A stretch of DNA of 64,000 nt from the NCBI RefSeq assembly GCF_001447785.1, contig NW_015168654.1, positions 1,748,031-1,812,030 of the forward strand. Direction: 5' to 3'. Each line of letters opens with the position of its first letter. Position 1 is the first letter of the stretch. The notes beneath the pieces were generated by a model. The model was not told the DNA's origin and searched no databases. It saw only the letters and a program-made list of their open reading frames with translations. The stretch comes from Gekko japonicus (Eukaryota). Positions 3,613 through 31,500 of this stretch are shown here, piece by piece. The position numbers and the translations under genes are program-made.

Positions 3613-4480
3613 CCAGGGGATTTCCTGCGGCCTTGATGCGAGTGGAAACAGGACTCCCTTCTATTAAGGCAAGGGTGCACTTCGCAATTATAAAATACTG
3701 GAAGAAGATCGATTCGTCTAGATCTAACTCTCTAAGCCACCAATCTGTTAGATCATTATTAACAAAAGACCCTACGCATTCTGATTCTTTTAGCAATATC
3801 CTTAGTAGATACATCATACCTGATGACCTCCTCGGGGCCTCAGGTGACCATTCCCAACTCAGGGAATGGATTTTCAAATCAGATGCTGTGATAGATGGCT
3901 CACAAAGTCGAAAACAGCGCCTTGGTACAGCTCCTATTTATATAATATTTCCAATATAATATTATATAATATTTCCAACTATAGCCCTCAGGGTGTCTTT
4001 TACTGCCTTGTGTTTTCAAACAATGTACACAGCATTGTGGGAGGGTCGATATTTTCAAATTCCAACAGAACACAGTATATGTATTTGCGGTTTACTTGCC
4101 ATTGAGAACCTCCCTCAATGTCTGTATCTTAGTCTGCCTGTTATACAACGCACCCAGAGACAAATTCTTGACAGGAATTTTATTTACTATAAAAGCGTAT
4201 TCTGAAAATGAGAAGATTGTGTTTTTGTTATCAGATACTGATGAGTTCATATTTTATAGAGTCTCCCTTTTTGCCCTTGCGGCCAAAAAGATTAGACCCA
4301 GGGCAGCATCATAGGGGCCACTCTTATAAAACGTAGGCTATTTTAACCGATTCTCATTTTATGTATGTGATTTTAGGTTTTACTTCTTTATGTATTTTAT
4401 CATAATGTTTTACTGTTCTATTTGAATGTTTTGTAATTTTGTTGTGGCCTATGGCTAACACAATAAATCCTACTTACGAC
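3613..4480 (+). mobile_element. 5'-truncated non-LTR retrotransposon 3' end (RTEX-like) with 10-bp TSD
   Basis: Frameshifted ORF2 C-terminus (ETGL...KYW; GRY...C.C), AATAAA near the end, TGTTTTGGCT at 3603-3612 and 4481-4490. Confidence 0.65.
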
Positions 4481-5612: not shown

Positions 5613-5753
5613 TACCCTGTTTTCCCAAAAATAAGACCTACCCCAAAAATAAGCCCTAGCAGGATTTCTATGCATTTGTGGTATAAGCCCTAGTGTGTCT
5701 TCTTGAGAAAAAATAAATATAAGACAGTGTCTTATTTTCGGGGAAACACGGTA
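5613..5753. mobile_element. Tc1/mariner (Tigger-like) MITE
   Basis: TIRs TACCCTGTTTTCCCAAAAATAAGAC / GTCTTATTTTCGGGGAAACACGGTA with terminal TA; nested in another repeat. Confidence 0.7.
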
Positions 5754-8700: not shown

Positions 8701-10562
8701 CTTACAGTCTTTTAGCCGGCTCACCCATTTTTGCCTTCGCTCGGGAAGGGTGGCTCCAGAGCAAACGAATGTATGCAGCAACCAATTCGGATCACTCACC
8801 ACTTTTAATGCCAGTAGCTCACAAAGCAGCATTTCTGCTCACAAGACTCCACAGCTTAGAGGGAGCACTGGAGTCCACCCTCCAAAGCACCCGTGTTCTC
8901 CAGGGGGAACTGATCTCTGTAGTCCGGAGATGAGCCGTAGTTCCGGGGGATCCCCAGGTCCCACCTGGAGGCTGGCATTCCTAGCAGGGGATGCGCTTTC
9001 GTGAGACACCAGTTCTGAAGAAGTGAGCCGCGACTCACGGAAGCTCCTCCCCTGCCACAAATCCCATTGGTCTTCTTTAAGGTGCTCCCGGACTCTTTTT
9101 TCTACCATGGCCTACCTTGCTTTAAATCTCCAGGAATTCCCCCCCTACCGGGGCGGATTAAGGTTCACCTGTGCCCTAAGCGCTGACCAATCTTGGTGCC
9201 TATGTTTTTTGCTATATGCTCCTCATATTCCCTTTTTGCCTGACTGATCACAGACTTGCATTTTATTTGTCACAGCCTGTGTTTATACATTTAATAATTT
9301 ATACATTTTAGTAATAAGATATTTTTTGTTTGTACATAATTCTTTTTCAAATTCAGACTTGAATTGTTCAAATTCAAAATACCTTTTGTCTTTTTCAAAC
9401 CTTTCCAAGATTTATAAATACAAAAACCAATGACAGGTATAACCTTCTGTTAATAAATTTCCTCTAGATTTGAAATTTATATTCTCCTTGTTTTTCTAAC
9501 ATATCACGATATGGTGACCATTTATGCAAACTGAAGATGTTAGGAGATGGGAAGAACTTGCAGCTAAAGATTGTAGGGAGTCCCAGGTTCAATCCCCTGA
9601 TATTTTCTGTTTTTAAAAAAATATCTGGTGGCGGTCACACGGGTGAGATAAACTGGGGGGGAATTTGACCCGCAGTTGCACGACCACACAGTCCTTTGAA
9701 GCTGCGGGGGCAGCCCACCACTGCGTGATCAGACGCAACTGCGGGTGAGTCAGGGGTTGTTGTTTTGTTTTTTTGCCATTTGTTTCCGATTCGCTTAAAC
9801 GGGGAATCGATGAATTGCATCTCAGCACTGAGGGCTCCCTATGGAGTGTTGCACATACTGAGAAGGGGGGAAAAAAACAATGGCACGGAGTCAGGATGGC
9901 CTGATCAGACCGTCCCGACACCATGAGAGCGTGCTGGAGCAATCGGACATGGGAAAGTCCGTCCGTGGCCCATAGCAACCCGTTTGCTACCGGACTTTCC
10001 CTGGTGTCTTTTTACTCCACTTCTGCGGCAGAGCAAAATGGGTTGCTGAAGGGTGCGGGGTGCTTCCCAGATGTCCGTGTCTGATACCACCCTTTAAATC
10101 CACTCGGCATTACGCGGCTAATTGTGCGTGTGATTGCAACCTTTGAGAGAATCACCTGGAGAAAGGAGCAGTCTCTGCCTTAGACCTCAGCGGTTTATTT
10201 TTTTCAAAGCACCACAAGCCGGAATAAAGATGTCAACAGCCTGATTAAAGGCTGGCTCCAAAAAACAAGGCCGCAAGGCAGAAAGAACATCAATCCTCAT
10301 CCTCATCCTCCTTCTTCTCAGTCAGTGTGTCACAATGGTTAAGAGTGTCAGAGCAGGATCTGGGAAGCCCAGGTTTGAAACCCCACTTGTGCCATGAAGC
10401 AGTCACACTCTCTCAGCATAACCTACCACACAGGGTTGTTGTGAGGTTACAATGGAGGAGAGGAGAATGATGTAACCTGCTTTGGGTCCTGTTTAGTGAG
10501 AAAAGGCAGGATATGAATGAATTAAAATATATATATATTAAAGTGGTAAGAGAAAGCCTCTG

Positions 10563-12122
10563 AACATACGAACATAAGCGAAGCCAATGTTGGATCAGGC
10601 CGATGGCCCATCCAGTCCAACACTCTGTCACACAGTGGCCAGAAATACCAGGTGCCATCAGGAGGTCCAGCAGTGGGGCCAGGACATTAGAAGCCCTTCC
10701 ACTGTTGCCCCCCCAAGCACCAAGAATACAGAGCATCACTTGCCCCAGCCTGTGATTTCCTATCTATACCTTGTGGCTAATAGCCACTGATGGACCTCTG
10801 CTCCATATGTTTATCCAATTCCCTCTTGAAACTGTCCATGCTTGTAGCTGCCACCACCTCCTGTGGCAGTGAATTCCATGTGTTAATCACTCTTTGGGTG
10901 AAGAAGTACTTCCTTTTATCTGTTCTAACCCGACCGCTCAGCAATTTCATGGAGTGCCCACAAGTTCTTGTATTGTGGAGGAGGAGGAGGAGGAGAGGAG
11001 GAGATTGGATTTATACCCCGCCCTTCACTACCCAAAGGTGTCTCAGAGTGGCTTACAAACTCCTTTCCCTTCCCCTCCCCACAACAGACACCCTGTGAGG
11101 TAGGTGGGGCTGAGAGAGCTCTGATAGAAACTGTTCTTTTTCAAGTACAGCTCTTATCAGAACTACGGCTTGCCCAAGGTCATCCAGCCAGGTGCAAGTG
11201 GAGGAGTGGGGGATCAAACCCGGTTCTCCCAGATTAGAGTCTGCGCACTTAACCAATACACCAAACTGGCACCAAACTCACCAAATTGTGAGAAAGGGAG
11301 AAAAGTACTTATTTCTCGACCTGCTGTATTCCATGCATAATCTTATAAACCTCAGTCCTGTCACCCTTCAGCTGTTGTTTCTCAAAGCTAAAGAGCCCCA
11401 AGCGCTTTCCCCTTTCTTCATAGGGAAAGTGTTCCAACCCTTTTATCATTCTAGTTGCCCTTTTCTGCACTTTTTCCAATGCTATAATATCCTTTTTGAG
11501 GTGTGGTGACCATAACTGTACACAGTACTCCAAACGAGGACGCACCATCGATTTATACAGGGGTATTATGATACTGGTTGATTTGTTTTTGATTCCCTTC
11601 CTAATAATCCCCAGCATAGTAGCCTTTTTTATTGCAGTCACACACTGTCTTGACATTTTCATTGAGTTATCTACTAGGACTCCAAGTTTCTGCCAGTTCG
11701 GACCCCATCAACGTGTATTTATATTTACGATTTTTTGTTCCAATGTGCATCACTTTGCACTTGGTCGCATTGAACCCCATTTGCCACATTGACGCCCACT
11801 CGCCCATCCTCAACAGATCCCTTTGAAGTGCCTCACAATCCTCCCTGGTTGTCACCACCCTGAACAACTTTGTGTCTTCCGCAAATTTAGCCACTTCACT
11901 GCTTCCTCCCAACTCCAAATTATTAATAAACAAGTTAAAAAGCATCGACTGAGTACTGATCCCTGATGTACCCCACTGCTTACCACCCTCCACTGAGAAA
12001 ATTGCCCATTTATACTCTCTGTTTCCTATTAATTAGCCAGTTTTTGATCCACAAAAGGACTTGACTATTGAGCTTACTTAGGAGCCTTTGATGAGGAACT
12101 TTATCAAAAGCTTTCTGGAAGC
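10563..12122 (-). mobile_element. CR1 LINE 3' portion interrupted by a SINE
   Basis: RT C-terminal motifs (KFAEDTKL; LYKSMVRPRLEYCVQLWSPH; EKVQKRATRMI); TTATGTTC-type tail. Confidence 0.9.
10977..11270 (-). mobile_element. tRNA-derived SINE (Squam3-like) inside CR1
   Basis: A/B-box head and L2-like tail; near-identical to copies at 30708, 31672, 46111 and 47715. Confidence 0.8.
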
Positions 12123-12568
12123 TCTCTACCAGCGCTCTTAAAACGCCTGAGTGTCTGAAACTGGAATGGGGACTGAGCCTGGCCTTTTAATCCTTAATCC
12201 TTGCGCTGATTGCCTCCTCTTCCTAGCGACCTAGCCCCTTCACTCCCCCCCCCTCCAACCCCCCCCCCCAAACGTCCGCTGTAGATGAGACCAGAAAATG
12301 TATTATTTATTTATTTATTGGACTTCTATCCCACCCTCCCCGCGAACGGGATCAGGGTGGGTCACAACAGAAAAACCAATACAAAATTCAACATTAGAAC
12401 TCTAAAGCATCATATTAAATGAAGGCAAGAAGGTAAGGCAAGGCAGCTAGTCTGAAGAACGGGCGGGAGTGCGCGCAGCTTGCCTGTGCGGCCGGAAGGC
12501 TGGCATGGTAACCCTTTCCCCGAAAAAAGCCTTTTCCAGCCTCATGAAGACTATCATTGCACGCATTC

Positions 12569-12570
<2 letters not shown>

Positions 12571-12619
<49 letters not shown>
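12571..12619. repeat. (AGCC)n microsatellite
   Basis: About 12 tandem units. Confidence 0.95.
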
Positions 12620-12620
<1 letters not shown>

Positions 12621-14257
12621 TGAAGGGTGGAGTATAAATCCAATCTCCTCTTCTCCTCTTTTTCTTTCTTCAACAGGAAGACTGACTGGCTTGGGCTGGC
12701 AAAGTTGCTGCCATTTGGGTAGCGGGCAGCAAACTAATTTGGGGTAGTAAGTAACTGCACTGTCATGGAGTGGACCAAGGGGGAAAAAGCCCCCATCGGT
12801 CTCCCCTGCTGTGAAGCACGTATAGGTTTCTGACTCTTTTCTAGTACCCTGTGGAATGGACCTCTCAGGACAGCCTCCAAAGGAATATTTAGGGTAGTGG
12901 TCATGGAATGAATTTCCTTCTGGGGTCATCTCTTCCCTTAAAAGCCATCTTGAACCAAGAGGAAAGGTGGGATGTAAATGTTTTAATAAACAAGTTAATA
13001 ATAAATTGAACCTTCCTCGTTCTTAGCACCTTTCCCCCCCTCTGCTGTCCTGCCAGAACCCTTGTTTCTTCTTTGTGGGGATGTTCATGACCCTGGAACG
13101 GAAGCATGCCTCGGTCTGCAGCTGGGTCAGTTAGCAAACATGCCAAGGATAACATGAGCTTCAGACACCAAGGGTCAGCCCTTCTCTCTAGTTCTGGCCG
13201 TGCCTACCATTTGCTGCTTAAGAGAGAGGAAGAGCTCTGGTGTGTTGCTGGCCTAGTGGGAAATGACAAGTCCTGCTGGGTCTCACCAGTCGCAGATGCC
13301 TTGCATGGTTTCCAGATCTTCCTTTGGTTTTGTCAGTGCATTCAGGAGCCCATTTTAAATGGCAGGGGTTGGCCTTAGAAGATGTAAAAACGGAGCAAGC
13401 AAAAATAGATACGAGAGCATCTCTGCACATGTGCACAGTTTATCTGAGCCATGGTCTTTTTAGAAGAGTGGGAATGAACCCTGGAACATGGGACATGATG
13501 AAGCCTGTGCCTCCGAACATGGGCAGAATGCCTTTAGTCATCACTAGGTAGATACAGTTTGTTGATTTATTTCCTTAATCTCTAGCCTGCCTTTCAAACA
13601 TGCTCAGATTCACTCCACAAAGTCTAGATTAAGGAATGGGTCTGCCTTCTAGGTGAGAGCATTCAAGCAGGTAGAGCCCAGGGCTCCTTTCATTTTTTAG
13701 TAACTAACTACAGTTATTTGGGAGTGAGATTTTGTGCCACTTAAACAGTAAGAAATACCAAGGTATTAAATTCACAATTTTTCAGCATGCAAGAAATGGA
13801 CTCCTTTAAAGCAGCTCAAACTGTCAAAAAAGAAAAGAAGAAAAGCAACTGTCAAAGGAAGGGCAACATACAGATCCTCATTCATCCCCTTCAAAGCTGC
13901 CTACTTGTTTCATTCCCTGCTTAGGGTAGAAGAGGTCCTATCTGTTTGCATCTGTTTTGTTTGGGGAAGGGGTGGAGTGAAGAGTATGACACTCTGTTGC
14001 CCTCTATGGTAAGGAAAATGGACTAGACTGGAGGAGAGAGGCTTGGGTTCACTGGATGGATTTAAGCCCCCTTGCCACGAGGACCACGGTCTCCCTTGAA
14101 TGTTTGCTGTAGCTCTGTAGTTCCAAGCACGCTTGTGGGGGCTAGTTCCTGTTGGATGCCAGGAGTGGCTGTTCTGTTTGGGAACCAGGGCTTCTGGCTT
14201 CTGTTCCATCCCTACAGAGAGCCCTCTCCAAGACACTCCTGTTCTCTGCACATCCAG

Positions 14258-14392
14258 CTTTGTCCGTGATGATTTCAAGCGCTACAAGGTGGACCTTGCC
14301 CATGTGGCCGAGCACCCGGCATGTGCGTTGCCCATCTCGGTGGTGATCAGCAACACGACGACAGGCACCCGCACCATCCTGCACGCCGCTAG
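14258..14392 (+). CDS. KHK: KHK exon 3a (KHK-A type)
   Basis: catccag|C...GCTAG|gtgcgt; 135 nt; [44 protein letters not shown]. Confidence 0.9.
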
Positions 14393-17300
14393 GTGCGTAG
14401 GCAGAGTGTTCCTTGTTTTCGGCTCTAACCCTCCTCTTTCTCTCCCCCTTCCCTGGCCCCAAGATTCATCCTGTCCGATTTCCAGAACCGCAACGTGAAT
14501 GTGGCCCATGTGGTCTGGCAGAGCCAGGGGGAGACGCCGTGTGCCTGCTGCATCGTCAACAGCTCCAATGGCTCTCGGACAGTCACTCTCTTTGACACGT
14601 AAGGCCCAGCCTGGCTGCTGCTTCTAACTCCCCCTGCCAATGGGTGGCGCCAGAGGGCACCCTGCCACTTGCCTTAGGGACCAGGCCTGCTCTAGCAAGC
14701 TCCTTTCCTCTTTCAACCAGCCACTTCCTCACATGGGACACTAGGGCTATGATGGTATTAACAGTGATTTCACCAGTTTCATGCTTTCATTCCATTTCCC
14801 ACAAGGGAGGAGATGTGCACTCCCAAGTATATCAGCCTGTTCCTCCCATCCTTATGGAGAGATTCTCTGATGCAGAGCAGAGCTCACGTCTGCCTGAATT
14901 CTCAGTATTTAGCATCAGGAAGCGCAAGGTGATGTGACCTGCACTTCAGGCATATTTGCATTGCACTGCACTGCACATTCAACTGCATAGCTGAATCTGT
15001 TTCTTTAGTGTTTTGGATTTTTAAAAAATTCTGCTGATCTTGAGGGAGCAGAAGGAAAATAGGCTGTCCATTGAGAAAATCTTATTCAGCAATCCTATTG
15101 CCTTCTCCGATTCTACCAATATTGCCTTTGCAGAAGGATCAAAACTCCAAAAGCAGAGGCTCTTGGGAATGGTAACTTTGGGGCCAAAATTGTGTTCTGC
15201 TGGTTTTTTGGCTCTTGTGTAGAATTGCCGCATAGCTGGATATAAGAAGTTGCCAATATGAAATCAGATTATTTGATCAACAGACTTTCTCTGGTAGAAA
15301 AAAAAGACTTCTCTCAGCACCAGCTATCTGGGCTTCTTTAGGTGGAGATGCCAGGGACCTTGTGCATGCCAGACATGTACTTTCTCACTGAGCTCTGGCC
15401 CTCCCCTTAAACAAAAGCAAAACTGCCATTGGGCCCAGCATTGTCTGATTTGCCTGGCAACCATTCTCTAGAGTATTTCCCAAGAGGCCTTGTAACTGGA
15501 GATATGAGGGATTGAACCGGGGACCTTGTGCATGCAAAGCACGTCCTCAGTCACTGGTCTGCGGGTCTTCCAAAGGAGAGAGGTGGTCAGAACCCATCCC
15601 TCACACAGCAGTTCCAACTACAGCCCCAGGAGCAAACTAATGCAGGGGGGCTTGGGCTTCTTGTATTCCTTGTGTAGGGAAACTGAAGCCAGTGGAGAGA
15701 TGAAGTTCAAACTCCTGAATAGGCCTGTCCATCCCGTCACAGTGCTGTGCACCCCCCCCCCCCCCCCCCGGCAGCACTCTTGTGCTTTTATTAATTGAGC
15801 TACAAACCAAAATATAGTAAGTGAAGCATGGGTCAGAAGCCCTGCCAGAACTTCTGAGCCTTATTTCTGCACATCTGTTGCACTCTGGGACCAGCTGCAA
15901 AGGAAGACTGGACTCCTGCCCTTCAAATAGTCGTTGAAAGAGAGAATTTTGGGAGGAACAGCTTTTCTTAACCTTGAATTACAAAGTTGCATCTCCCAAA
16001 GAACAAGCATATGTATCTCATTTTCAGAAGGCCAAAGCTCTTCATACATCTTGTTTTAATCAGTACTTACAACACCCCTGTAAGGTAGGGCTGTGTTGTC
16101 ATCGCGCATTGCAGAGGAGCTGAAAACATACAACTTGCCTAAGGGAAGTGAGTGTGTGGCAGAGGGGATATTTAAACCAGGATCCTCCTAGATCACAGTT
16201 CATTCTCTTAGCCACTGTGCTAGATGCTTCAGCATAACTATGGAAGGCACAGCCTCATCAATATCAGTTGCTTCTGGTTGTGCAAATGCTGCTTGGAAGC
16301 TGGGAACTGGATCCCTAGGTTCTCTGGAAAAGAAGTAGAATCTCACAAGGAGAAGAAACATGGAGTTTCTGGACTTTTGCCCTGACCTGGTAGGAGCTCC
16401 TCTGGATTCCTACTTTTCTAACTTGTCCTGCCTTTATGCGAAATATGGCAAACAGTGTGAAGAACAGAGCTCTGTAGGGTGTAGCTTTATTCTCTCTCTC
16501 TCTTCATCTCTTATCAGTAATGACTAATATTAATTATCCATCGAGTACACTTGATGTACAAAGTGCTTTTTGATTGCTATCTTGTTGGTCATTGTGACGT
16601 TTTAAAGTTTCCGCTTTTGACAACAAGTTCAGCAGGCAAAGCTTGGCATGCAGAAAATCTGCTGAATTTCTTCTTACTATGCAGCTTTTAAAAGACAGTT
16701 GGCAACCCAACATGCTGGTTGATGCTCGCATTTTACAACTTGGGAGAACCGAGGCTCAGGTGGAGGGATGCCACTCTGTAAGTCAAGTGATTCAGATGCC
16801 AAGACTTGCAAGGGCAGATCCTGTTCTTCATCCTCTCATCCATAGCCATGGCTGTGTTAGAAGGTACAAGACAAAAGTTGCGGGGTTCTGTAACCTCTAG
16901 CTTATGGTGCTAGGGCTCAAAGACGATGCTCCCAATCAGGATTTGTGTAGGGGCTTGCCTGAGCAGGTCGAAAGAGTCCCCACCACCTGACCCAAGCAGG
17001 TTCTCAGCATGGCGCCACCCAGTGGGAGGGGAAATACCATCTGTGCACGGTCAAGAAAGATCTGACTCACTTAATTCTTGGTAGATTCACCTACTAATCC
17101 TACACAATGCAGCCAATCATCTTTGCCAATGCTAATTCCTGATCGTCCTTCTTGGTAATTGCACACCACTGTTTCTCTCCTTGTTATATCCCCCCCCCCC
17201 CCCTCTTTCTGACTCATGGATTGAGAGTTGCAGGTGGGACGGCTTCTTGACCAGAGCAGGGGGGCACACCTGGAATCTGGACAGTGGAAGGTGAGAGGCT

Positions 17301-20300
17301 GTGGGCTTGCAAAGAGGCTCACCTGGGCCCAGTGATCCAAGACAGAAGGGAAGGCCACCATTGTGCAGTGGGGAAATGCTTTCTGTGACTTGGGAGGGGG
17401 TCTTCCCTTCCATGTGCTGAGACAGTGTCCCCCTATTTTGATACACTTCCAAGGGCTTTCCATGGTCCCCTTTTCACTCCTGTCCCTTAGGCAGCACTGC
17501 TAGCAAATGTTCAGCCTTACCATTTAAATATGGGGTTGTGCTCAAGTGAACTCCTCCCGAGGGGGTTTCTTAATCTTTATAGGGGATGGGCACAAAACTC
17601 CCCTCCTGCTGCCAGTGGAGCGGCAAGACTTGGTTAATGATTCCTCTGGGCCGGCACAGGCCTGGGAATGTCTTCCGGGTGGCCTTTGTCCCAGGGGCAG
17701 GTTTTGAGGGTTAATAATTGAAATGGGGTAGAGTCCAGTTCCCCATCATGGGGGCTGAGAGCCAGTTAACCCTTGGCCTACCAAGCACCCCAGATTACAG
17801 CCCTTGACACCTCACTGGGGCGTGGTACTGTTCTCAGGAGTAGGGGCCCATGAATTAAAAAGACGATCGTTCTAGAAGTGTGGGTGGGTGGGTGAAATTT
17901 CTTTTCCATTGGAATGGAATAACCACAGTTAGGCCTAGGGATGCCAGCCTCCACGTGGGTCTTAGGGATCCCCTGGAATTACAGCTCATCTCCAGACTAC
18001 AGAGATCAGCTTCCCTGGAGAAAATGGATGCATCGGAGGGTGGACTCTATGGCAGTGGGCCCCACTGAGGTTCCCTGTCCTCCCCAGGCTCCGTCCCCAG
18101 ATCTCCAGGAGTTTCCCAGCCTGGATCTGGCAACACTTACCCAGTGGCCAGTGGCCAGTAGCCAGGGGAACCTAGTGACTCTAATTAGGTCCTATATGTC
18201 TGGGTTTTGGACGGGCTTGCCTGATCAACGTAAACCTCAACCTATCTCTTATGGGAAATGGAGCCTCTCTTGGACACCAGTGAATGCAGCAGGCTTAAGG
18301 TCAGAGGTTTCCTTGCAGATACCTCCAAAACGGCCAAAGGCCAAGCAATTTCCGCAACAGCCTAGAAAAGGCAAGGTCAAGCAGGTGGTGATGCCTTTTG
18401 GTATTGCTTAAGGCTGGTTAACTGCCCATTTGGGGGTGTCTGGTCTGATACATTGCATGCTGGGATGTCTAATAAGGTGGGCTACCCTCCAGCATCAAAG
18501 TGATTTAAATTTCTTACCAGTACTACTGTCCCTCTCAAGGGGCTCAAAGCACAAGGTGGGTGGTGTCCACTAACTAATTTCTTACAGGTACTATGTGCTG
18601 GCCCATACCAGCTTCCTTTCATGCCTGGCTACTCTCCTCTTTGGAAATTGCAGAGTAGAGAGTGAGAGAATTTAGTCCTTGTTTTTATTTGGGGAGAGGG
18701 GTTGAGGCCCCTTCCAGTCATTCATACTTCTATAAACTACAGTCTACTCTTCCATAATGTAAGAAACATAAAGAATTGCCCTGCTGACCTACCCAGCACT
18801 GCACCCTCTGCCAGAAAGCCAGTCCAAATGCAAAGGTCTTACAGCATTTCTGGAAGATGCTCAGGCTCAGACTTTGACCATCTCCGAGGGAAACAAATTT
18901 CTGCGGCAGCTCCCTAGAACACTTCTCCCCATGTATTTTATGTTTAATTTTTATTTTACAAAATGTATATCCTTTCTTTCTGCCCTCACAAGGGCTAGCA
19001 GGGGGGCTAACAAACTAAAACGTACATAATAAAATCATGTTGTAAAACCATTAAAACCAACTCAACCCCCCCCCCACACACACATAATTAAAACCAGAGC
19101 TAAAACACAAAGACATAAAACCAACAATTAAAATGTTGGGCAGGAAGATGGGATCTCTGAGGGAACACCAAATCAAATGAAAAAGTTTTCACCTGCAGGT
19201 GGAGGATGGCAACAAAGAGGGACAGACGAATTTCATTGGAGAGAGAGTTCCAGCGTTTTGATGCTACGACTGAGAAGGCCTTCTCATGGGTTGCCACCTG
19301 CCTAGTTTCAGGAGGTGAGGGCACCCAAAGCAGGGCCCCTGAAGATGGCCATAGAGGTGGCCCTTCAGGTATGGTGATCCCAAACCATATAGGGCTTTAA
19401 AGGGCAACACCAGCACCTTGAATTGCACCCAGAAACAGCTGGGAAGCCAGTATAGATGGGCCAAGATTGGGGTGATAATTAGGGTTGCCAGCCTCCAGGT
19501 GGGGCCTGGAGATCCCCTGCTTTTACAACTGATCTCCAGCTAACAGAGAGCAGCTCCCCTGGAGAAAATGGCTGCTTTGAAGGGTGGACTCTGTGGCATT
19601 GTGCCATGCTGAGGTCCCTCCCCAAACCCCACCCTCTCCCAGATTCACTCCCAAAGTCTCCAGGTATTTTCCAACCCAGAGCTGGCAACCCTAAGTGATA
19701 GGGTTCCTATGACCCACTCCAGTCAACATCCTCGCAGCAGCATTCTGCACCAGTTGAAGTGTCCGAACACTTCTTAAGGCAGCCCCATGTAGAGCGCATT
19801 GCAGTAGTCTAACCCAGTGCTAGGCCTGGGTCCAAGAGCCCTCCGGTGTTCTGTTCAGATTTTCAGGCATGGATTTAAGAGGCCAGGCATCTTGGGCACA
19901 TTGTCAGGACATTTTCAAGACTGTCAGGAGCAAACTCTTCAGGGCTTCGTAGATTATAGCCAACATTTAGACTTGCTCTCTGCATACTGCTGGGAAGGGA
20001 GGCTGCTGCAGTGTTTTCCGACTCAGCCCCACGTGCAACACATAAATAGAACCTCCATATTCAGGAATCTGCCTCTGTTTGCCGGCTTCTGAGAGCAAAC
20101 AATAAGGATGGCTGGCTTCTTAATGCCTTGGCTGTGAGCGGCCCAGAAGCACTGGATGGGTGCCATGGAAACACAAAAGAGTTCAGTTGGCTTCCAGACA
20201 GGGAAGGCAGAGTCAAACAGTTTAAGCGGAGGTTTTAGGGTTGTTCTCTGTCAATTATTTTTTCAACAGGTATGCATTTTAATCACAGTTGCCTGCGCTC

Positions 20301-23300
20301 CTGCTCTTTGAAGGCAGGCTGTCGATTTAAATAATCTGAGGAGGGGGAGGCCCCGCAATAGCCTGCGTCCTCTGCTGTCTCACAGATTTTGTCCCCTCTG
20401 CATCTCTTCCACCCCTCTCTGCAGCAACCTGCCAGATGTGACAGATGCTGATTTTGAACAGGTTAACCTCTCTCAGTACAAGTGGATTCACTGGGAGGTG
20501 AGTGAGACTACAAGCCCTAAGCGCAGTGAGTAGGGTTACCAGCTCTGGGTTGGGAAATAACTGGGCAGAGCCTGAGGAAGGCGGGGTTTGGAGAGGGGGG
20601 GGGCAGGGCTTTTTTTGTAGAAAAAAACCAGCAGAAACTCATTAGCATATTAGGCCACACCTCTGATGCAACATATTAGCATATTAGGCCACACCCCATG
20701 CCTTCCCTTGGCTTGCCCAGGCAAGCCGGGCCTTGGACAGTCTGGGGGAGACATTTAAATACCTCCCCAATCCTTCCAGGCCCCCCACCGGGGCCCCCAC
20801 CTCGGAGTCGCCAAGGGGGGGGGTTACTCTCCAGGCCTTCCCTCTGTAGCCACGCATGCAGTGGTTTTGGCTGTAGTGGGCGTGGCCAACTCTGAAGCCA
20901 GCCAGAACGCCGTTCCTGTGCGTTCCTGCCCAAAAATAGCCCTGGGGGGGGGAACTTCAGTGGGCTATAATGCCATAGAGTCCACCTTCCAAAGCAGACG
21001 TTTTCTCCAGGTGAACTGGCCTGTCAGCTGGAGGTCAGTTGTAGTAGCCGGAGATCTCCAATCATCACCTGGAGATTGGCAACCCTAATAGTAAGTCATA
21101 AGTATGTTCACTGAATCGAATGGGGCTTGCTCCCCAGTAAGACTGCAGCCTGGGATGGTGACCTTTCCTGTCTCTGTCTGCCTGTGGCATATGGGATGGC
21201 AAAGCCCTTTGAGAGAACCGTCACTTGATAAATCTCACCGGTGGGTGCTCCTTTGCAGTAGTGAAGTGCCTCTTGCTGCTTAGGCCACCAAGCCATGCTT
21301 CGATCTGTGGCTATCCTCCTTTGCCTCCCCAGCTGCTTTGCCAGTCCTCTTGCCTCTTTGCCTCCCGTCCCCATTGCTGTTCCCCATCCCTACCCCTCCC
21401 TGTGGTTGGTGTTCCATATCTCGCCTTCTGCTCTTGTGCCTGGGCCGGTTAAAATCTCAGCTCAACCAAGGTGGCCGTAGGCATGCCAAGGAACAGCTGT
21501 GGCTCAGCAAGAGAGCTTTCTTTCTTTCGTTCCTTCTTTCCAACCCAAATGTGTATGCTGCCTTTCTGCCCCCAGGTGGCTAACTGTGAAACCGTTATAA
21601 ACACGTACCATAAAACAATTGATAAACAAAGCAATTAAAACCAAAACTAAAATGTACATTAAAATATAGAAAGCAGTAATTAAAGCACACAGCAGAAAGG
21701 AGGGGACGTTGAGGGAACATCAGATGAAGCACAAAATGTCTTCAACCACTGATGGAAAACAGTTGACAGAGGAGGAGAGATAAATATCCCCCGGGAGAGA
21801 CCTTTTGTGAGTCACTGCTCACTACATTTAGTTAGTCTTTAAGGTGCTACTGGACTCTTGCTCTTTTCTACTGCTACAAAGAGACTGACATGGTTGCCAA
21901 TCCTGCTCTATCCTGAGAGAGTGTTTTTATTGGTTTTGTTTATTTAAACATTTGTTAGCGACTTTTCTATCTTGTGGGACTCAAGGCGGCTTACAAAGTA
22001 AATTAAACAACAATTATCAAAACACATCAAAAACTCACAAGTGCTATTGCTATAGTTTTGGTGCTATGACCAAAAGGGCCCTCTCTCAGGTTGCCTATTG
22101 GGGGGGGGGGGGGGGATGTCCCAAAGCTGGGCCTTGGAAGATAACTTCAGCAGTTGGGTAGGTTTGTATGGGAATACGTGGTCCTTCCTTTACATGTAGG
22201 TGGTTTGGTTTTGGTCCCTTGGAAAGACTCCTGCCTATGCCACTGCCAGTGAGAGGGCACAGTCCTAGGCCTGACAGGTCAATGGTCAGACACTATAAGG
22301 CAGCTTCATATAAGCAGCTGCTGCCTCCAACTTGGTCGCAGGGCTGGTTTCCCAGGGTGGTCAGGTTGGGCATTTCCAAAGCCCCAAGACTAGAGAAAAG
22401 CTTAACACTCCCTTGCCTTGCATGGGACACCTGAGAAGAATTGGGGGGGGGGGGTGGATGATAAAACTATCCTGCATTACAGGACTGTTATATTATCCTG
22501 ATTGGGGGCCTGGAGACCAAGCCCTATGAGGAAAGGCAGAGGGACTTGGGAATGTTCAGTCTGGAGAACAGGAGGTTGAAGGGGGAGATGATTGCTCTCT
22601 TTAAGCATTTGAAGGGCTGTCCCTTAGAGGAGGGCAGGGAGCTGTTCCTGTTGGCACCAGAGGAGAGGACTCCCAATAATGGGTTTAAATTAAGGGCGGG
22701 AAGGTACCGGCTGGATCTTAGGATAAACCTTTTTACAGAAAGAGTTGTGCAACAGTGGAATCAGCTGCCTAGGGAGGCGGTGAGCTCCCCCTCCCTGGCA
22801 GTCTTTAAGGAGCGGCTGGACAAACACTTGTCAGGGATGCTCTAGGCTGATCCTGCATTGAGCAAGAGGTTGGACTAGATGGCCCGTATGGCCGCAACTC
22901 TGTGATTCTATGTTAAGTGTTATGAAAATGCCAAGTGTTTCCTGTGGGCAGGGTGCTTGCAGCCACTGCTAGATAAATGGGAAGGAGTGGGACCCATCCC
23001 TGCAATTCTCAACAGCTGTTCAGAGAAGTGGGTTGGGCAGAGGTGTCTGAGCAGAGAATCTGAGCGGCCTACCCCACTAAGAGCAACTCTCTTCAACAGA
23101 AATGCCTCTGAACAGGTGAAGATGATGCGACGGGTAGAAGAGTATAACGAAACCTGCCCTGAATCTCAGCGAGTGGGCACATCCGTGGAGGTGGAGAAGC
23201 CACGGCAAGAATTATACCAGCTCTTTGGCTATGGAGATGTGGTAGGGAACCCCCAAAGGTGGGAGCTGTTGAGAATCTAAGGGGGGGGGGTACCTTGGCT

Positions 23301-25806
23301 GAACTTGGGGAGGATGTGGCTAGTGAAGAGCAAGCCAAAGACTGGCATCCCAACCTGGATTAGGCCACGCCAGACAGCTGCTGCCCCATGAGTGGTTGTA
23401 CTGCAAGGCCAACTGTTGAGTCCCACATCCTTTGCAATGTTTTTGATCAGCAACAGCTATAGAGACCTGCAATTGTAGCACAACAGAAAATTCCCCTTGG
23501 AAGAATCCGTAATGCTGTAGATACTTGGGAAAGTCAAAAAGCAGTTCAGTGGCCCATTTGGCCTTCTGCTGTTGACTGGCGCACCAGTTTATTCAGCTAC
23601 AAGTTTGGCAGCCAGCGTGTTCAGATACCGTTGAGCTAATTCTAGCAATAATATAGTTGAGAAGAGCCACAGGAGGGGTTGTGGCTCAGTGGCAGAGCAG
23701 GCAGAAGGTCCCAGGTTCAGTCCCCAGCATCTCCAGTTAAAAAGGATCAGGTGATGTGGAAGAGCTCTAGCTGAGGAGAGCCCCCACCAGTCAGAGTAGG
23801 CAGTACTGACCTTGGTGGAGCAATAGTGCAACGCAGTAAAAAGCAGCTTGCTATGTGTCCAACATTCCCTTCATGCCTGCTTAGGAAGCCCCTGCACCCC
23901 AAGCCTCTGGCAGACAGTCAGCTGAGCTGGGCTAGGCAAAGTGGCTTGAAGCAATGGTGATTTTGCCGCTGTTCTCTCCCTCCAGGTGTTTGTCAGCAAG
24001 GACGTGGCTAAAGATCTTGGTTTCTGTTCTGCCTCTGAAGCTGTGAAGGGGCTATACAGGCGTGTGAAGCCAGGGTAGGTGGAGGCCACAAAGTCAGGTG
24101 GGGTGGTTAAGCTGGAATTGTTCCATAGAGTCCCTTAGCCAGTGCTTGAGGGAGAGGGGAGTGTATGAAATGGAACACTGGGTGGGATGGAGTCAAAGTG
24201 CAGAGAAACAGCACGGGGCCCCTATCAGCAGCAGGAGAAAGCCCCTGAAAAACTGTACTTGACAGGTGCCCTTAAGAGAGCCAGTGTGGTGTAGTGGTTA
24301 AGAGCGGCAGACTCCAGTCTGGAGAACCGGATTTGATTCCCCATTCCTCCTCCTCAGGGGTCATTTCGTAGAAAAAGAGCTAGGGGAACTCATTAGCATA
24401 ACTCATTAGCATATGCCACACCCCCTGACATCAGGGGCCCGGCGGTGGACCTGCAAGGCCAGCGGGAGAAAGCCCCGCCAAGGCCCTCCCTGGCCCCAGG
24501 CAGGCAGGGGTGGGGAGAGGCGGGGAGGAAGCAACTTACCCTCCCTCTTCTGCCTCCTCCTGGCTGAATGAGGGCTGGAAGCGGGGTGGCCGGAAGCAGG
24601 GGGCGGGGCTTCGTCATGTGCCCCGCCCCCCTGCACCTCACCCGGGGGAACTGCATTCCCCCGCGTTCCCCCCCGAAATGACATCTGCTCCTCCTGAAGC
24701 CTGCTGGGTGACCCTGGGCCAGTCACAGTTCTCTCAGAACTCTCTCAGCCCCACCTGCCTCACTAGGTGTCTGCTGTGGGGAGAGGAAGGGAATGTGATT
24801 GTAGGCCGTTCTGATAGGCCGTTCTGAGACTCCTTAAGGTAAAGAAAAGCATGGTGTAAAAACCTACTCTTCTCCTTAGTGCTCTTCATTGAGCATGCCA
24901 GAGAATGAAGCTCATTGGCCCTGTGGCAATCCCCCCCCCCAATTTGTCTAACTGGTCTGGAACTATTTCTTGATCCCAACCTAAATCTGCTTCGTGGGTT
25001 ACAGCTCGAACTGGTGGTTTCTCACCTGTGTCTGGTGAGCATTGAGGGCAGGTGTATTCGCACTGCAAAGCACTTCTGCAGCACAGGCTGCCATTGAAAT
25101 ACTTATTTTCTTTAGTTCCACCTTACCAAGCTAGCTCAGGGCACACCATTTTGTGACTCCCATCCACATGCGTATTGGGGTGGGGGGCAGCTATGGGGTC
25201 ATCCATCCTACTTTGAACGGCAAGGCATCTGGCTCCCGCTCTGCCCCTTTGGGTCACTTTGATTGTGTAGGATGCACTGTTCGCAAGTGGAGAGTGCATT
25301 GAGAGGGGGCTCTTGGGTCCTAACCCCACAAACTCCCTGCTTTCCACCCAGGGCCACCTTGATCTGTGCTTGGGCGGAGAATGGGGCTGATGCGATGGGA
25401 CCAGGTGGGCAACTGCTGCACTCGGATGCCTTCCCCCCCGACAATGTCGTGGACACGCTGGGGGCTGGGGACACGTTCAACGCTTCTGTTATTCTTGCCC
25501 TCAGCAGGGGTGAGTACATCAGTCCTCCTCCCCCCTCCCACACATCAGTCCTGTCCAATTCCGCATGCCTTGTCAAATGGCGGCAGCACTAGGGGCACAG
25601 GGCAGAGGCGTGAGACGTCTCCCTCTGCCCACTGACCCTTCAAGTCTTAGCAGATCCAGAGTGGCTGCTGGCCGTGCCTCCGTATGGCGGAGAGAGTTGA
25701 CACTCTGCTTTCTGCGGCAGGGAGACCACTTCAGGAGGCCATCACCTATGGGTGCCAGGTGGCTGGCCGGAAGTGCGGGGTGCACGGCTACGATGGGATC
25801 GTGTGA
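14258..25806 (+). CDS. KHK: Ketohexokinase gene span (exons 3a/3c-8; exons 1-2 not in window)
   Basis: Spliced exons translate to the PfkB-family fructokinase, including [13 protein letters not shown] and C-terminal [10 protein letters not shown]. Exon sizes 135/135/73/142/89/158/86. Exon 5 acceptor anomaly described in findings. Confidence 0.95.
14464..14598 (+). CDS. KHK: KHK exon 3c (KHK-C type)
   Basis: ccccaag|A...GACAC|gtaagg; 135 nt; [45 protein letters not shown], similar to human [30 protein letters not shown]. Confidence 0.93.
17630..17830. promoter_or_regulatory. Candidate HNF1/HNF4 enhancer in KHK intron 3
   Basis: GGTTAATGATTCC 17632, TGGCCTTTGTCCC 17680 (DR1), GGTTAATAATTGAA 17709, GGGGCGTGG 17817. 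Confidence 0.45.
19480..19693. mobile_element. hAT MITE, full length, inserted in an L2 fragment
   Basis: TAGGGTTGCCAGC...GCTGGCAACCCTA. Confidence 0.8.
20425..20497 (+). CDS. KHK: KHK exon 4
   Basis: ctgcag|C...GAG|gtgagt; 73 nt; [24 protein letters not shown]. Confidence 0.93.
20531..21087. mobile_element. hAT MITE carrying a nested second MITE (20604-20944)
   Basis: Outer TIRs TAGGGTTACCA / TGGCAACCCTA; inner CAGGGCTTTTTTTG / CAAAAATAGCCCTG flanked by G8 on both sides. Confidence 0.8.
22505..22911 (+). mobile_element. CR1 LINE 3' fragment
   Basis: [20 protein letters not shown]...[13 protein letters not shown]...LDKHL; GATTCTAT tail. Confidence 0.85.
23100..23241 (+). CDS. KHK: KHK exon 5 (5 nt shorter than expected at the 5' end)
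   Basis: [47 protein letters not shown], donor GTG|gtaggg. The acceptor caacag| gives 142 nt, out of phase with exon 4. Confidence 0.85.
23986..24074 (+). CDS. KHK: KHK exon 6
   Basis: ctccag|GTG...CCAGG|gtaggt; 89 nt; [29 protein letters not shown]. Confidence 0.93.
25352..25509 (+). CDS. KHK: KHK exon 7
   Basis: acccag|G...AGGG|gtgagt; 158 nt; [52 protein letters not shown] (PfkB GAGD motif). Confidence 0.95.
25721..25806 (+). CDS. KHK: KHK exon 8 (terminal coding part)
   Basis: cggcag|GG AGA...GTG TGA; [27 protein letters not shown]. Confidence 0.93.
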
Positions 25807-26060
25807 GCTGCATTCCGGAAGCCATGTCTGCTGGGTCTGGGACCCTTCTCCGAGCCAAGGACCAAAATCTTCTGCGCTGCTGCACTGCACGCGCACCATG
25901 GACGCTGGTGCCACCCCTGTGCAACTCACAGCTGGTGGGAGAGGGATAGGCCAAGCCTGACTTGCCACCCTGCACGCAGTGTGCCGTCTGCTCTGGCTGG
26001 CCCTGGCGCTCTTGTCCCCAATGGGGACTCTCTTGTGTTGCCATTTCTAGAGTAAAGATC

Positions 26061-26066
26061 AATAAA
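26061..26066 (+). terminator. KHK polyadenylation signal
   Basis: AATAAA 255 nt after the stop codon. Confidence 0.65.
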
Positions 26067-26294
26067 AGTGTTCAGATTTGCAGATCATGGCTGGCTCTGT
26101 GTGCAAGTCCCACATGAAAGGTTTGCAGAGCAAGCCCGTCTGACACTTGAATGGTCTGGAGGAGCAGCGCAGACTATAAATTGGAGAAGACCCCAGGACG
26201 GGAGTACGGAGCAGGAATCCAGATAACTGCTGTGGCATTCTGCGTCTTTCAGAATGAGCAGCGGAAGAAGGGAGACGTTGCAGCCAAGGGGACG

Positions 26295-26476
26295 TAGGGC
26301 TCTTTTTGTAGCAGGAACTCCTTTGCATATTAGGCTACACACCCCTAATGTAGCCAATCCTCCAAGAGCTTACAGAGCTCTTCTTACAGGAGCTACTGTA
26401 AGCTCTTGGAGGGTTGGCTACATTAGGAGTGTGTCGCTTAATATGCAAATGAGTACCTGCTACAAAAAGAGCCCAG
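26295..26476. mobile_element. Near-perfectly palindromic MITE
   Basis: Arms of about 80 bp complementary from GGGCTCTTTTTGTAGCAGG to CCTGCTACAAAAAGAGCCC. Confidence 0.8.
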
Positions 26477-28217: not shown

Positions 28218-28592
28218 TCAGTTGCCGGGAGCAGGAGGCATCTCAGCCCCTTGTCCCTGTGTGTCTGGCGATGCTTCCTGGCCATGATCCCCTTTGTGCA
28301 TTTGTGCTCCAGGGCTCAGGGAAGGGGCCTCCATGACTCCCTGCTCCTGAAAAGTCTCTGGGGCAGCCGGGGGCTCTGCTGTACCTTGCTGGACTGGGAG
28401 GTCTGAGAGCCCAACGCTTTGTTCATCCGGCTCTAGAGGGGCCCACAACACTGTCCCATCTTCTCCACTGGGGGCAGCAAGCAGAGCTGGGGCCTGATCC
28501 TGCCAGGGGCCAAGAAACAGCTCCGAGGGCTCCAGCAACCCGTCCCGGTTCAAGTCCTGTGTCTCCAGGATGCTGTCCACCATCAGTACCAG
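28218..28592 (-). CDS. CGREF1: CGREF1 last coding exon (EF-hand 2 plus low-complexity tail)
   Basis: ctgcag|CTG; LVLMVDSILETQDLNRDGLLEPSELF...PAPGN*. Confidence 0.9.
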   Translation of the reverse strand: MVLMVDSILETQDLNRDGLLEPSELFLGPWQDQAPALLAAPSGEDGTVLWAPLEPDEQSVGLSDLPVQQGTAEPPAAPETFQEQGVMEAPSLSPGAQMHKGDHGQEASPDTQGQGAEMPPAPGN

Positions 28593-31500
28593 CTGCAGGA
28601 GCAGACGAAGAGATCAAGTCAACACTTTGGTTATTAACAAAGAAACATCCATGGTCACTGATTTCCCCCCCCCCCCCAATCCCCGGAGCTTTAATCCTGT
28701 ACTTGCATTTCTTTAGTCTTATTAAAATCATGGAATTAATTTAAACTATACTTAACAGATGCCTTGGGTGCCTTCTAAGTATACCCAACTTTGCATCTTC
28801 CTTCTGAGCCTTAAAATAACAAAAAGTTCCGCAGTATATGTGCGGTCGTGTGATGAGCCCTGCTGGATGAGACCAGTGGTCCATCTAGTCCAGCATGCTG
28901 TTTCACATAGCGGCCAACCAGGTGCCGTAGAGGGCCAAACAAATGGGGCACGGAGGATAAGGTCAGTGAAGCTGCACACTCTCTAGGCATAAAGTTTAGA
29001 AGAACAGACTTAGACCTCAATGCAGAGTGATTACTTCACGTGAGGGTCCAACTGCGCCCACCTTCTGGATGATTAAAATAAGGAAACTGACGACAGCTAA
29101 GAATACTGAGTGAGCCCTGACCTGGATAGCCCAGGCAAGCCCAGTCTCGTCAGATCTCGGAAGCTAAGCAGGGTCGACTCTGGCAAGTATTGGATGGGAA
29201 ACCTCTTTGGAAAACCAGCAGTTGGGAGGCGGGGGCAGGCTTTATTCAGCCACCTCTCTGAATATCCTCCAGGCCCCCAGTAGGGGTCAGTCACCAGAGG
29301 TCGCTGTGACTTCCAGGTGCGCATGCACATGCACAAAAATACACCCCCCCCCAAAGAATACCTAGGGAGAGGTGTTGCAATATTCACACCCTTTTTATAA
29401 GAAAACTGTGGCAACCAGCCTTTGAGGCTAAAGGAAGACAAGAGCCCTTAGGGGGTGAGCGGTCTACAAATCGAAATAATAAATAAATAAATAAATAAAC
29501 AAATAAGAGAGAATGCCTCAAGACCTGTTCTGGTGGCCTAGGGTTGCCAGCCTCCTGGTGGGGCCTGGAGATCTCCTGGTTCCCCTGTCGAAAATGACTG
29601 CTTTGGAAGATGGACTCTATGGCATTATACCTGCTGAGATCCCTCCCCTCCTCAAACACTGCCGTCCCCAGGCTTCACCCCCCAAAGTTTCCAGGTCGCT
29701 CTGGGCCATGAGCAGAGATCTTAGAGGGGTTTTTATAGAAGAGGCATAGAGAGCAAAGAGGTCCAGCTGACTCAACTGATCAGTCTCCCCAAGGGAGATC
29801 CTCCCACTTCCAATCTGAGGTCTAATTCACAGGTGCCCCAAGAATGAGGCAAAAAAGCCCTGAGGCAGTAGAGACTGTTCCACTTCAAACTGCGGGTAGA
29901 TTTCAATGTGCCTTCAGATGGAAGGAATACCATGAAAATTAGTCCAGCATGGGGAAAGGCTCAGCACTCTTGCCTTTTGTTTGCTGTGCTGGTTTTCCAT
30001 CTGCCAGTTTTTAAGCAAAGGGAAATATGCTAAATTGTAATCTTCTACCTGCAGTCTGAAATGGTGCAGTCCACGCTGCATGTCATTGTAGCCATCCCTG
30101 AAACTCAAGGGAGCTTCACTGAGGAGAAAAATGAAAAATAGCAGGAGCAGGAGAGGAACGATTTTAAGCAATTAGAGCTTTGTCAGGGGACCGTCACAAA
30201 AATGTGTAGGTAGTTATGCTGCCTTCACATGAAATCAGGGAAAATAATAAAACACACTGCGTTCTTGAATTATTTCTATATAGCAAAAATTTTATTGCAT
30301 GCAAATGCAGTATGGTATCATGAGTTACATATTTTGTTTTGTGATAGTCACCTGTTGAAGACCTAATGGCTCGAAAAAGCTGCTTCCATCATAGCTGCTC
30401 CCTTGGTACCTCCTAACATTTTGTGTAACTTTTAAATATTTTGTGATTGACCTGGGGCAGCCATTTTCTGACTGGCCCCAGCCCCCAGGATAGCTGTTTT
30501 GCCACTGGTTCCAACTCCATGGCGGCCATTTTATTGTGGCGGCCACTACCTCTTCTTTAAAAATTCCAGAGTGCTCACTGGTTCAACTACATGAGAAGCC
30601 CCTGCTCTTGAGAGTCAAGTTATGACAGAGACCCAAGGGGGCAGGCTCAGGGGAGCAACAAGAAACGGGATCCAGAGGTTACCGCCTAACAAAGGAATGG
30701 AGGCAACAAGAAGAAAAAGAAGAGATTGGATTTATACCCTGCCCTTCACTACCCAAAGGTGTCTCAGAGCGGCTTACAAACTCCTTTCCCTTCCCCTCCC
30801 CACAACAGACACCCTGTGAGGTAGGTGGGGCTGAGAGAGCTCTTGACAGAAACTGCTCTTTTTCAAGGACAGCTCTTATCAGAACTACGGCTTGCCCAAG
30901 GTTGTCCAGCCAGGTGCAAGTGGAGGAGTGGGGAATCAAACCCGGTTCTCCCAGATTAGAATCCGCGCACTTAACCACCACACCAAACTGGCTCTCAGTC
31001 TCCCAGGACAGGCTGGCAGAGTGTATGTTTCTCCTAGGGCTGGCAAGGGTGCCAACGCGCCTGACACAAAGAAGGCCAAGGAATTAAAAAGCACCTACCA
31101 AGTCAGGCAAGGGCTGCCTTTTGGCCTGTTCTTCCGCCAGCTCACTAAGCAACCGCATGAATTCCAGGCCATCCAGTCGACCGCTCTTGTCATAATCATG
31201 GAGAACAAAGAGAAGCAAGAGAGCTGCAGATACCGGGAGAAGATTGTGTCAGCCAAAGGGAAAGTGTTGGGGAAATGAGAGGTGCAGAAACCTTTTCATG
31301 CACTCCCATCTCCATTGTGTTCGTTTTGTGAGGGAGAGAAGCTGGCTTCCCAATTGCATCAAAACAGAGAGAGAGACAGTTGTTCTAAACCAAAACTCAA
31401 TTTATTCCATTACACACTCTTAAGTCAGAAAACACTTGTAGCATTTCAGAATATTTCAACACAACCCCAATACATAAATAGTGCACTTCTATAAGTCCTA

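What the first reader, a model, noticed from the sequence alone, without database searches (positions are those of the whole stretch)
23070..23241. KHK exon 5 lacks 5 nt at its acceptor: apparent frameshift and null allele of fructokinase
Seen: exon 4 ends in phase 0 (TGG GAG|gt). The only good acceptor (branch-like CACTAA 23075-80, pyrimidines, CAACAG 23094-99) opens onto A AAT GCC TCT GAA, giving a 142-nt exon. Read from exon 4 this gives AAA TGC CTC TGA, with the stop at 23109-11. Known: human KHK reads WIHIE|GRNASEQ with a 147-nt exon, and KHK loss causes benign essential fructosuria. Inference: cag|GGCAGAAAT may have collapsed to cagAAAT by loss of GGCAG between two CAG repeats. All other exons are intact, so this is either a very recent or polymorphic loss in a low-fructose-diet lizard or a consensus error; the N gaps indicate a draft assembly. 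An in-frame downstream acceptor (exon start 23116) would delete GRNASEQ.
Basis: partly seen in the sequence, partly recalled or inferred. Interest (0 to 1): 0.8.

Follow-up and report, generated by a model that had tools for sequence, protein, structure and literature searches.

The report
KHK frameshift is an assembly error
The fructokinase (KHK) gene looks broken only because about eight letters of this genome assembly are wrong; sequencing data from three other samples of the same species show an intact, normally spliced exon, so the finding is ordinary.

Summary
KHK exon 4 ends CAC TGG GAG|GTGAGT in phase 0. The only good acceptor (CAG, 23097-99) opens a 142-nt exon 5, which is out of frame with a stop at 23109-11.

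That text is not what the animal's DNA reads. Contigs of two DNA runs (X1, X2) and one RNA-like run (X3) of the same species all read TCTTCCCAGGGCAGGAAT where the window has TCTTCAACAGAAAT. This gives cccag|GGC AGG AAT: a 147-nt, in-frame exon encoding GRNASEQ.

- X1 and X2 each cross the site in one contig at the same depth as its flanks, with no depth left for the window's version.
- Elsewhere in about 4-5 kb of unique sequence, X1 and X2 show no single-letter differences from the window, only two more small gaps.
- Differences that are only gaps or clusters, with no substitutions, point to residual consensus error, not natural variation.
- Exons 3C to 8 match solved ketohexokinase structures end to end; only residues 140-141 (Gly-Arg) are missing.
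- Genomic fragments from other species all read Q|GRNASEQ...GYGDV, which is 49 codons.
- X3's depth suggests the gene is expressed.

Verdict: assembly artefact (about 0.92) and an intact gene. The exon 4-5 RNA junction itself was not displayed. The scan holds 30 other "frameshift" notes on this genome, all unchecked.

The parts
14258..14392 (+). KHK exon 3A (alternative, 135 nt)
   Evidence: The stop-free frame reads ...[13 protein letters not shown].... The boundaries ...AG|GTGCGT were read. This exon was not searched on its own.
14464..14598 (+). KHK exon 3C (135 nt)
   Evidence: It matches solved ketohexokinase residues 65-115 at E=5e-18. The match to KHK-C-type chains is better than to 2hqq (E=5e-6). 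Splice sites aag|A...AC|GTAAGG.
20425..20497 (+). KHK exon 4 (73 nt), which ends in phase 0 with TGG GAG|GTGAGT
   Evidence: The translation [24 protein letters not shown] matches KHK 116-139.
23093..23100 (+). Mis-assembled stretch at the exon 5 acceptor. The window has T-C-A-A-C-A-G-A; the runs read TCCCAGGGCAGG, which is 4 letters more plus G at 23096 and 23100.
   Evidence: tables 3, 4 and 8. X1 carries the run version at depth 87 of 87, X2 at 57.5 of 57.5 and X3 at 6.5 of 6.5 (69.6 of 69.6 at 23100). The two descriptions of the difference give the same string.
23100..23241 (+). KHK exon 5 as printed in the window (142 nt, out of frame). In the runs the exon starts 5 nt earlier in exon terms: 147 nt encoding GRNASEQ...GYGDV.
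   Evidence: Fragments from other species carry a 49-codon exon.
23986..24074 (+). KHK exon 6 (89 nt)
   Evidence: [13 protein letters not shown]... matches KHK 189-218. Splice sites.
25352..25509 (+). KHK exon 7 (158 nt), with [12 protein letters not shown]
   Evidence: It matches KHK 218-273 at E=9e-25. Pfam PfkB scores 34.8 bits against a cut-off of 25.8. Splice sites.
25721..25806 (+). KHK exon 8 coding part and the TGA stop (25804-06)
   Evidence: It matches KHK 269-297. Boundaries.

Best explanation
The frameshift at the KHK exon 5 acceptor is a local consensus error in this draft assembly. It is not a feature of the animal. The real sequence at 23090-23103 is TCTTCCCAGGGCAGGAAT. That gives a strong pyrimidine-rich acceptor (ctctcttcccag) followed by GGC AGG AAT GCC..., a 147-nt phase-0 exon encoding Gly140-Arg141-Asn-Ala-Ser-Glu-Gln. 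It joins in frame to exon 4 (...WIHWE) and exon 6. KHK is therefore an ordinary, intact and apparently expressed ketohexokinase gene. Shown: the run sequence, its depth, the exon-by-exon matches and the 49-codon exon in other species. Inferred: that the assembled animal is the same individual or line as X1/X2, and that splicing uses the first CAG.
For: tables 3 and 4: X1, X2 and X3 come from three samples and two studies, and all carry the same 4 extra letters and two A-to-G changes within 23093-23100. No depth is left for the window's letters., table 8: the site is crossed by single contigs of 869 nt (X1, depth 87), 604 nt (X2, depth 57.5) and 290 nt (X3). Each is otherwise identical to the window, at the same depth as its neighbours, so this is the same locus and there is no half-depth bubble. 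Every other listed piece of X1 and X2 on unique sequence has 0 other letters; only X1 piece 4 has 2 gaps, and it spans the G16 and G12 runs. X3 shows 7 substitutions away from the acceptor site, 6 of them in its listed pieces (about 2.6 kb). So X1/X2 share the assembly's haplotype, and their only differences from it are gaps or clusters; the run version gives 147 nt translating to [11 protein letters not shown]...GYGDV without a stop; exons 3C to 8 cover KHK 65-298 and only residues 140-141 are missing; genomic ORF fragments of other species read ...Q|GRNASEQ...GYGDV|V..., 49 codons, with the Q being the acceptor's CAG., table 2: X3's depth is about 31-38 in bins holding exons 5-8, against 0.5-11 in unique intron bins. 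Two further X3 contigs (about 63 depth in total) cover 23100 with G but not the intron side. Published background: residual long-read errors create frameshifts and premature stops that falsely pseudogenise genes (PMC12007338).
Against: I could not show that X1 or X2 is the individual that was assembled, and run identities are coded. Logan contigs show presence, not absence. The exon 4 to exon 5 joint in RNA was not displayed, because table 5 was filled by joints from interspersed repeats. The one raw-read RNA run (X22) had almost no KHK reads. The error is not a simple homopolymer slip: CC and GG are lost and there are two G-to-A changes, which is an unusual pattern.
Confidence: 0.92

Rival explanations
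1. A real but private or rare null allele. On this reading the assembled animal truly carries the complex change (four letters lost, two G-to-A), while the three sampled animals carry the intact allele.
For: The window text is unambiguous. The identity of the assembled individual with X1/X2 is inferred, not shown. KHK loss is benign in humans (essential fructosuria; general knowledge).
Against:: X1 and X2 are identical to the window over about 4-5 kb of unique sequence apart from this spot. They therefore share the haplotype, yet they lack the lesion at full depth. The change needs at least three mutational events within 8 nt. All other exons are intact. Differences that are only gaps, with no single substitutions, are not what natural variation looks like.
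Confidence: 0.05
2. The window sequence is real and splicing rescues it. The rescue would use the in-frame acceptor at 23114-15 (deleting GRNASEQ) or a shifted donor and acceptor pair.
For: An AG at 23114-15 gives an in-frame start at 23116. A donor 4 nt downstream of exon 4, paired with the AG at 23082-83, would also be in frame (read).
Against: The premise fails, because the DNA of three samples does not have the lesion. Deleting N-A-S-E would remove the conserved NXXE motif of the ribokinase family (my own knowledge, not tested). In X3, exon-level depth already covers 23100, upstream of 23116 (table 3).
Confidence: 0.01
3. The run contigs come from a paralogue or another organism, and the window is correct.
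For: Contig depth sums everything that aligns (tool caveat).
Against: The contigs of 869, 604 and 290 nt are identical to the window in the intron on both sides of the 8-nt stretch (table 8). They have single-copy depth equal to the flanking contigs.
Confidence: 0.01

Closest known systems
Vertebrate ketohexokinase (KHK, fructokinase; PfkB/ribokinase family), as in the solved human and mouse structures 2hqq, 3b3l, 3nbv, 8omg and 6p2d
   Same: Exons 3C to 8 match residues 65-298 collinearly. The 135-nt alternative exons 3A and 3C are both present. The DTLGAGDTF motif is present and the exon 7 ORF hits Pfam PfkB. With the run-supported sequence, exon 5 is 147 nt and starts GRNASEQ, as in the genomic fragments from other species.
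   Different: There are ordinary substitutions, for example WIHWE against WIHIE. Exons 1-2 were not located in the 14 kb upstream. Arg141 is AGG here, which places a second CAG 5 nt inside the exon.
Spurious frameshifts from residual consensus errors in long-read or draft assemblies (for example PMC12007338; Merfin preprint 10.1101/2021.07.16.452324)
   Same: A small localised gap cluster breaks an otherwise intact conserved gene. It is absent from short-read data of the same haplotype. The only other differences nearby are two gaps in a contig that spans long G runs.
   Different: It is not a plain homopolymer-length error. It combines the loss of CC and GG with two G-to-A changes. The sequencing platform and polishing history of this assembly are unknown to me.
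Human essential fructosuria alleles of KHK (for example G40R and A43T; general knowledge)
   Same: The same gene. The window text, taken at face value, would predict a null allele.
   Different: No lesion exists in the sampled animals' DNA, so there is no evidence of any loss of function.

Membership tests
Ketohexokinase (KHK), PfkB carbohydrate kinase family | Collinear sequence similarity to solved KHK across exons | tested here: met
   Exon-by-exon phmmer against PDB sequences gave: 65-115, 116-139, 142-188, 189-218, 218-273 and 269-297.
Ketohexokinase (KHK), PfkB carbohydrate kinase family | PfkB domain with the GAGD catalytic-loop motif | tested here: met
   PF00294 scores 34.8 bits against a cut-off of 25.8 on the exon 7 ORF. 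[12 protein letters not shown] aligns to the same residues in KHK.
Ketohexokinase (KHK), PfkB carbohydrate kinase family | Mutually exclusive 135-nt exons 3A and 3C | tested here: met
   Both are present at 14258-14392 and 14464-14598. The second matches KHK-C-type chains better than it matches 2hqq.
Ketohexokinase (KHK), PfkB carbohydrate kinase family | In-frame exon 4-5 junction encoding E|GRNASEQ (147-nt exon 5) | tested here: met
   It is not met by the window text (142 nt). It is met by the sequence in runs X1, X2 and X3. Other species have a 49-codon exon.
Ketohexokinase (KHK), PfkB carbohydrate kinase family | N-terminal exons 1-2 with the GGNASN sugar-binding segment | tested here: inconclusive
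   Motif and degenerate-codon scans of 1-20000 on the + strand found no candidate. The exons may lie upstream of the window.
Unitary pseudogene or null allele | The lesion is present in the organism's own sequencing reads | tested here: not met
   there is zero depth for the window's letters at 23093-23100 in X1, X2 and X3.
Unitary pseudogene or null allele | Further lesions or loss of expression | tested here: not met
   Exons 3C to 8 are intact with canonical splice sites. In X3, bins holding exons 5-8 have depth of about 31-38 against 0.5-11 in unique intron bins.
Assembly consensus error | Absent from independent short-read data that otherwise match the assembly haplotype exactly | tested here: met
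   table 8: the listed X1 and X2 pieces on unique sequence have 0 other letters, except at this site and 2 gaps across long G runs.
Assembly consensus error | The raw reads used for the assembly disagree with its consensus at the site | not testable with these tools
   The assembly's own reads are not identifiable because run names are coded.

The most novel reading that the evidence does not exclude
The assembled animal truly carries a private, complex KHK-null haplotype while the rest of the species is intact. That would be a natural 'essential fructosuria' lizard.
Probability: 0.04. Interest if true: 0.3.

Novelty: not a real feature. Interest (0 to 1): 0.04.

Why it matters
There is little here for biology. 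KHK in this lizard is an ordinary intact gene, and there is no evidence that fructose metabolism was lost. The practical value is for the scan. This assembly carries small gap-type errors that can fall exactly on splice sites and mimic null alleles. The other "frameshift" notes on this genome (30 so far, including HOXA13, GTF2H5 and DIO1; all unchecked) should be tested against reads before anyone interprets them.

Tried and rejected
- **AT-AC (U12-type) intron.** I considered whether one could use the AC at 23096-97 so that AGA AAT reads R-N in frame. I rejected it: exon 4 has a perfect U2 donor (GAG|GTGAGT), and Gly140 would still be missing.
- **Shifted donors and acceptors.** I listed them all by eye. 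Only 23116, or a donor shifted by 4 nt paired with the AG at 23082-83, are in frame. Both became moot.
- **Literature on KHK loss in reptiles**: nothing found. **KHK with NXXE**: no paper found.
- **Word search with the 47-aa exon**: it returned only three short genomic fragments from other species and none from this species.
- **P0003.** Its exon part is identical to the human protein, so I take that contig to be human or close to it. After listing it I did not compare it, save it or search for more of it.
- **Exon 4-5 splice joint.** Read laying did not display it, because repeat joints filled the table and 490 rows were not shown. Run X22 (raw RNA) had almost no KHK reads.
- **The large representative-protein search** was not used. 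The protein's identity was never in doubt.
- **Exons 1-2** were not found by motif scans.
- **Pfam on neighbouring ORFs** gave nothing.

Full report
**What the window says.**
- Exon 4 of a ketohexokinase gene on the + strand runs 20425-20497. It ends CAC TGG GAG, followed by a perfect donor, GTGAGT.
- The next coding block starts after CAACAG (23094-99) and runs 23100-23241, which is 142 nt, with the donor GTAGGG.
- Read in phase 0 from exon 4 it gives AAA TGC CTC TGA, with the stop at 23109-11.
- The +1 frame gives NASEQVKMM...GYGDV.
- By phmmer against the sequences of solved structures, exon 4 matches ketohexokinase residues 116-139 and the in-frame part of exon 5 matches 142-188.
- Exactly Gly140-Arg141 have no in-frame coding. 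The deficit is 5 nt.

**The rest of the gene.** I searched exon by exon, always by reference.

| Exon | Window coordinates | KHK residues matched |
|---|---|---|
| 3C | 14464-14598 | 65-115 |
| 6 | 23986-24074 | 189-218 |
| 7 | 25352-25509 | 218-273 |
| 8 | 25721-25803, stop at 25804-06 | 269-297 |

- Exon 7 contains [12 protein letters not shown], and its ORF hits Pfam PfkB above the cut-off.
- Exon 3A lies at 14258-14392.
- All splice sites are canonical and the phases fit.
- With a 147-nt exon 5 the coding length from exon 3C to the stop is 685 nt. That fits a protein of about 298 residues.
- Exons 1-2 were not found in the 14 kb upstream by motif scans. I leave that open.

**The decisive test.** The look-up of sequencing runs listed 24 runs, 23 of them labelled the same species. 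I laid four on 20350-26300:
- X1 and X2 are DNA contigs from two samples of one study.
- X3 is an RNA-like contig run from another study.
- X22 is raw RNA reads.

All three contig runs disagree with the window in one place only, 23093-23100. X1 and X3 are described as CC put in behind 23093, GG put in behind 23095, 23096 A>G and 23100 A>G. X2 is described as 23095 A>C, C put in behind 23095, GGG put in behind 23096 and 23100 A>G.

Applying either description to the window gives the same string. Where the window has TCTTCAACAGAAAT, the runs have TCTTCCCAGGGCAGGAAT. That reads ctctcttcccag|GGC AGG AAT GCC TCT GAA CAG. It is a better acceptor, followed by a 147-nt exon that translates without a stop to [49 protein letters not shown].

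**Why this is the same locus and not a second allele.** The site is crossed by single contigs of 869 nt (X1, depth 87), 604 nt (X2, depth 57.5) and 290 nt (X3). Each is identical to the window on both sides of the 8-nt stretch (table 8). The depth carrying the run version equals the whole depth at the site: 87 of 87 in X1, 57.5 of 57.5 in X2. It also equals the depth of neighbouring unique sequence. There is no half-depth bubble, as a heterozygote would give.

**Why an assembly error and not a private allele.** All other listed pieces of X1 and X2 on unique sequence, about 4-5 kb, show zero other letters against the window. X3 shows 7 substitutions away from the acceptor site, 6 of them in its listed pieces (about 2.6 kb).
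- X1 and X2 therefore share the assembly's haplotype. They are the same animal or line, although I cannot prove this because identities are coded.
- Their only differences from the assembly are of gap type: this cluster, and two gaps in a contig that spans G16 and G12 runs.
- Natural variation is dominated by substitutions. Residual consensus error in draft long-read assemblies is dominated by small gaps, and it is known to create false frameshifts (PMC12007338; Merfin preprint 10.1101/2021.07.16.452324).
- The window version also needs at least three events within 8 nt: loss of CC, loss of GG and two G-to-A changes.

**Other species.** A word search with the 47-aa exon found three short ORF fragments called on genomic contigs. 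All read ...Q|GRNASEQ...GYGDV|V.... The Q is the acceptor's CAG read through, and the trailing V is the donor's GT. In P0001 (38 of 47 residues identical to the window) and P0002, the exon part is 49 codons, or 147 nt.

The exon part of P0003 is identical to the human protein. I take that contig to be human or close to it, so I did nothing further with it.

**Expression.** In X3, bins that hold exons 5-8 have mean depth of about 31-38, while bins of unique intron have 0.5-11 (table 2). At 23100, three X3 contigs (69.6 depth in total) carry the G. Only one of them (6.5) extends into the intron. Exon-level depth therefore starts within a few letters of the acceptor.

This fits a spliced, expressed KHK mRNA. 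However, the exon 4-5 joint itself was not displayed, because the joints table was filled with joints between copies of interspersed repeats. X22 had almost no reads on the gene.

I put 0.92 on assembly error with an intact gene and 0.05 on a real private allele in the assembled animal. The remainder goes to splicing rescue or a paralogue artefact. Interest is low.

**One lead for the scan.** Its notes list 30 "frameshift" observations on this genome, including genes such as HOXA13, GTF2H5 and DIO1. They are unchecked. After this result each should be tested against reads first.

Noticed in passing
window 23097-23100 (run-supported sequence cccag|GGCAG|GAAT): In the true sequence Arg141 is AGG. 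This puts a second CAG 5 nt inside exon 5. Using it as an acceptor would give exactly the frameshifted 142-nt exon that the window shows. Whether a minor unproductive isoform uses it is unknown.
   Followed up: no
window 25792: Run X3 reads A instead of G at full depth (31.4 of 31.4). That changes GAT to AAT, Asp to Asn, in the C-terminal GYDGIV of KHK. X1 and X2 agree with the window. It is probably a polymorphism.
   Followed up: partly
window 1-14300, + strand: KHK exons 1-2 (residues 1 to about 64, including the GGNASN segment) were not found by peptide-motif or degenerate-codon scans. They may lie upstream of the window, or be damaged in the assembly.
   Followed up: partly
window 20549-21145, 21743-21941, 22340-22936, 23534-23931, 24131-24926: The KHK introns hold very high-copy interspersed repeats. 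Summed contig word depth reaches 7.5 million in X1 against about 90 for unique sequence. The repeats are also covered in the RNA runs, and their copy-to-copy joints swamped the joints table.
   Followed up: no
window 22100-22115 and 22443-22454: These are G16 and G12 runs. The X1 contig over 21857-22528 is 2 letters shorter than the window (table 8). This is probably homopolymer-length error on one side or the other.
   Followed up: no
same genome, other windows (scan notes): Thirty first-reader notes on this genome mention frameshifts, several in genes that are normally indispensable (HOXA13, GTF2H5, DIO1, AP5B1, ABHD3). Given this result, they may share one cause in assembly quality.
   Followed up: no
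window 14258-14598: Exons 3A and 3C are each 135 nt and are separated by only 71 nt (14393-14463), as another note of the scan says. I confirmed the boundaries and the 3C identity.
   Followed up: partly
window 44446-44709 (+) and 28221-28613 (-): By eye these long stop-free stretches look like exons of neighbouring genes: one of alpha/beta-hydrolase (ABHD1) type and one of CGREF1 type, which would match the human KHK neighbourhood. Pfam found nothing for them, so this rests on memory only.
   Followed up: partly
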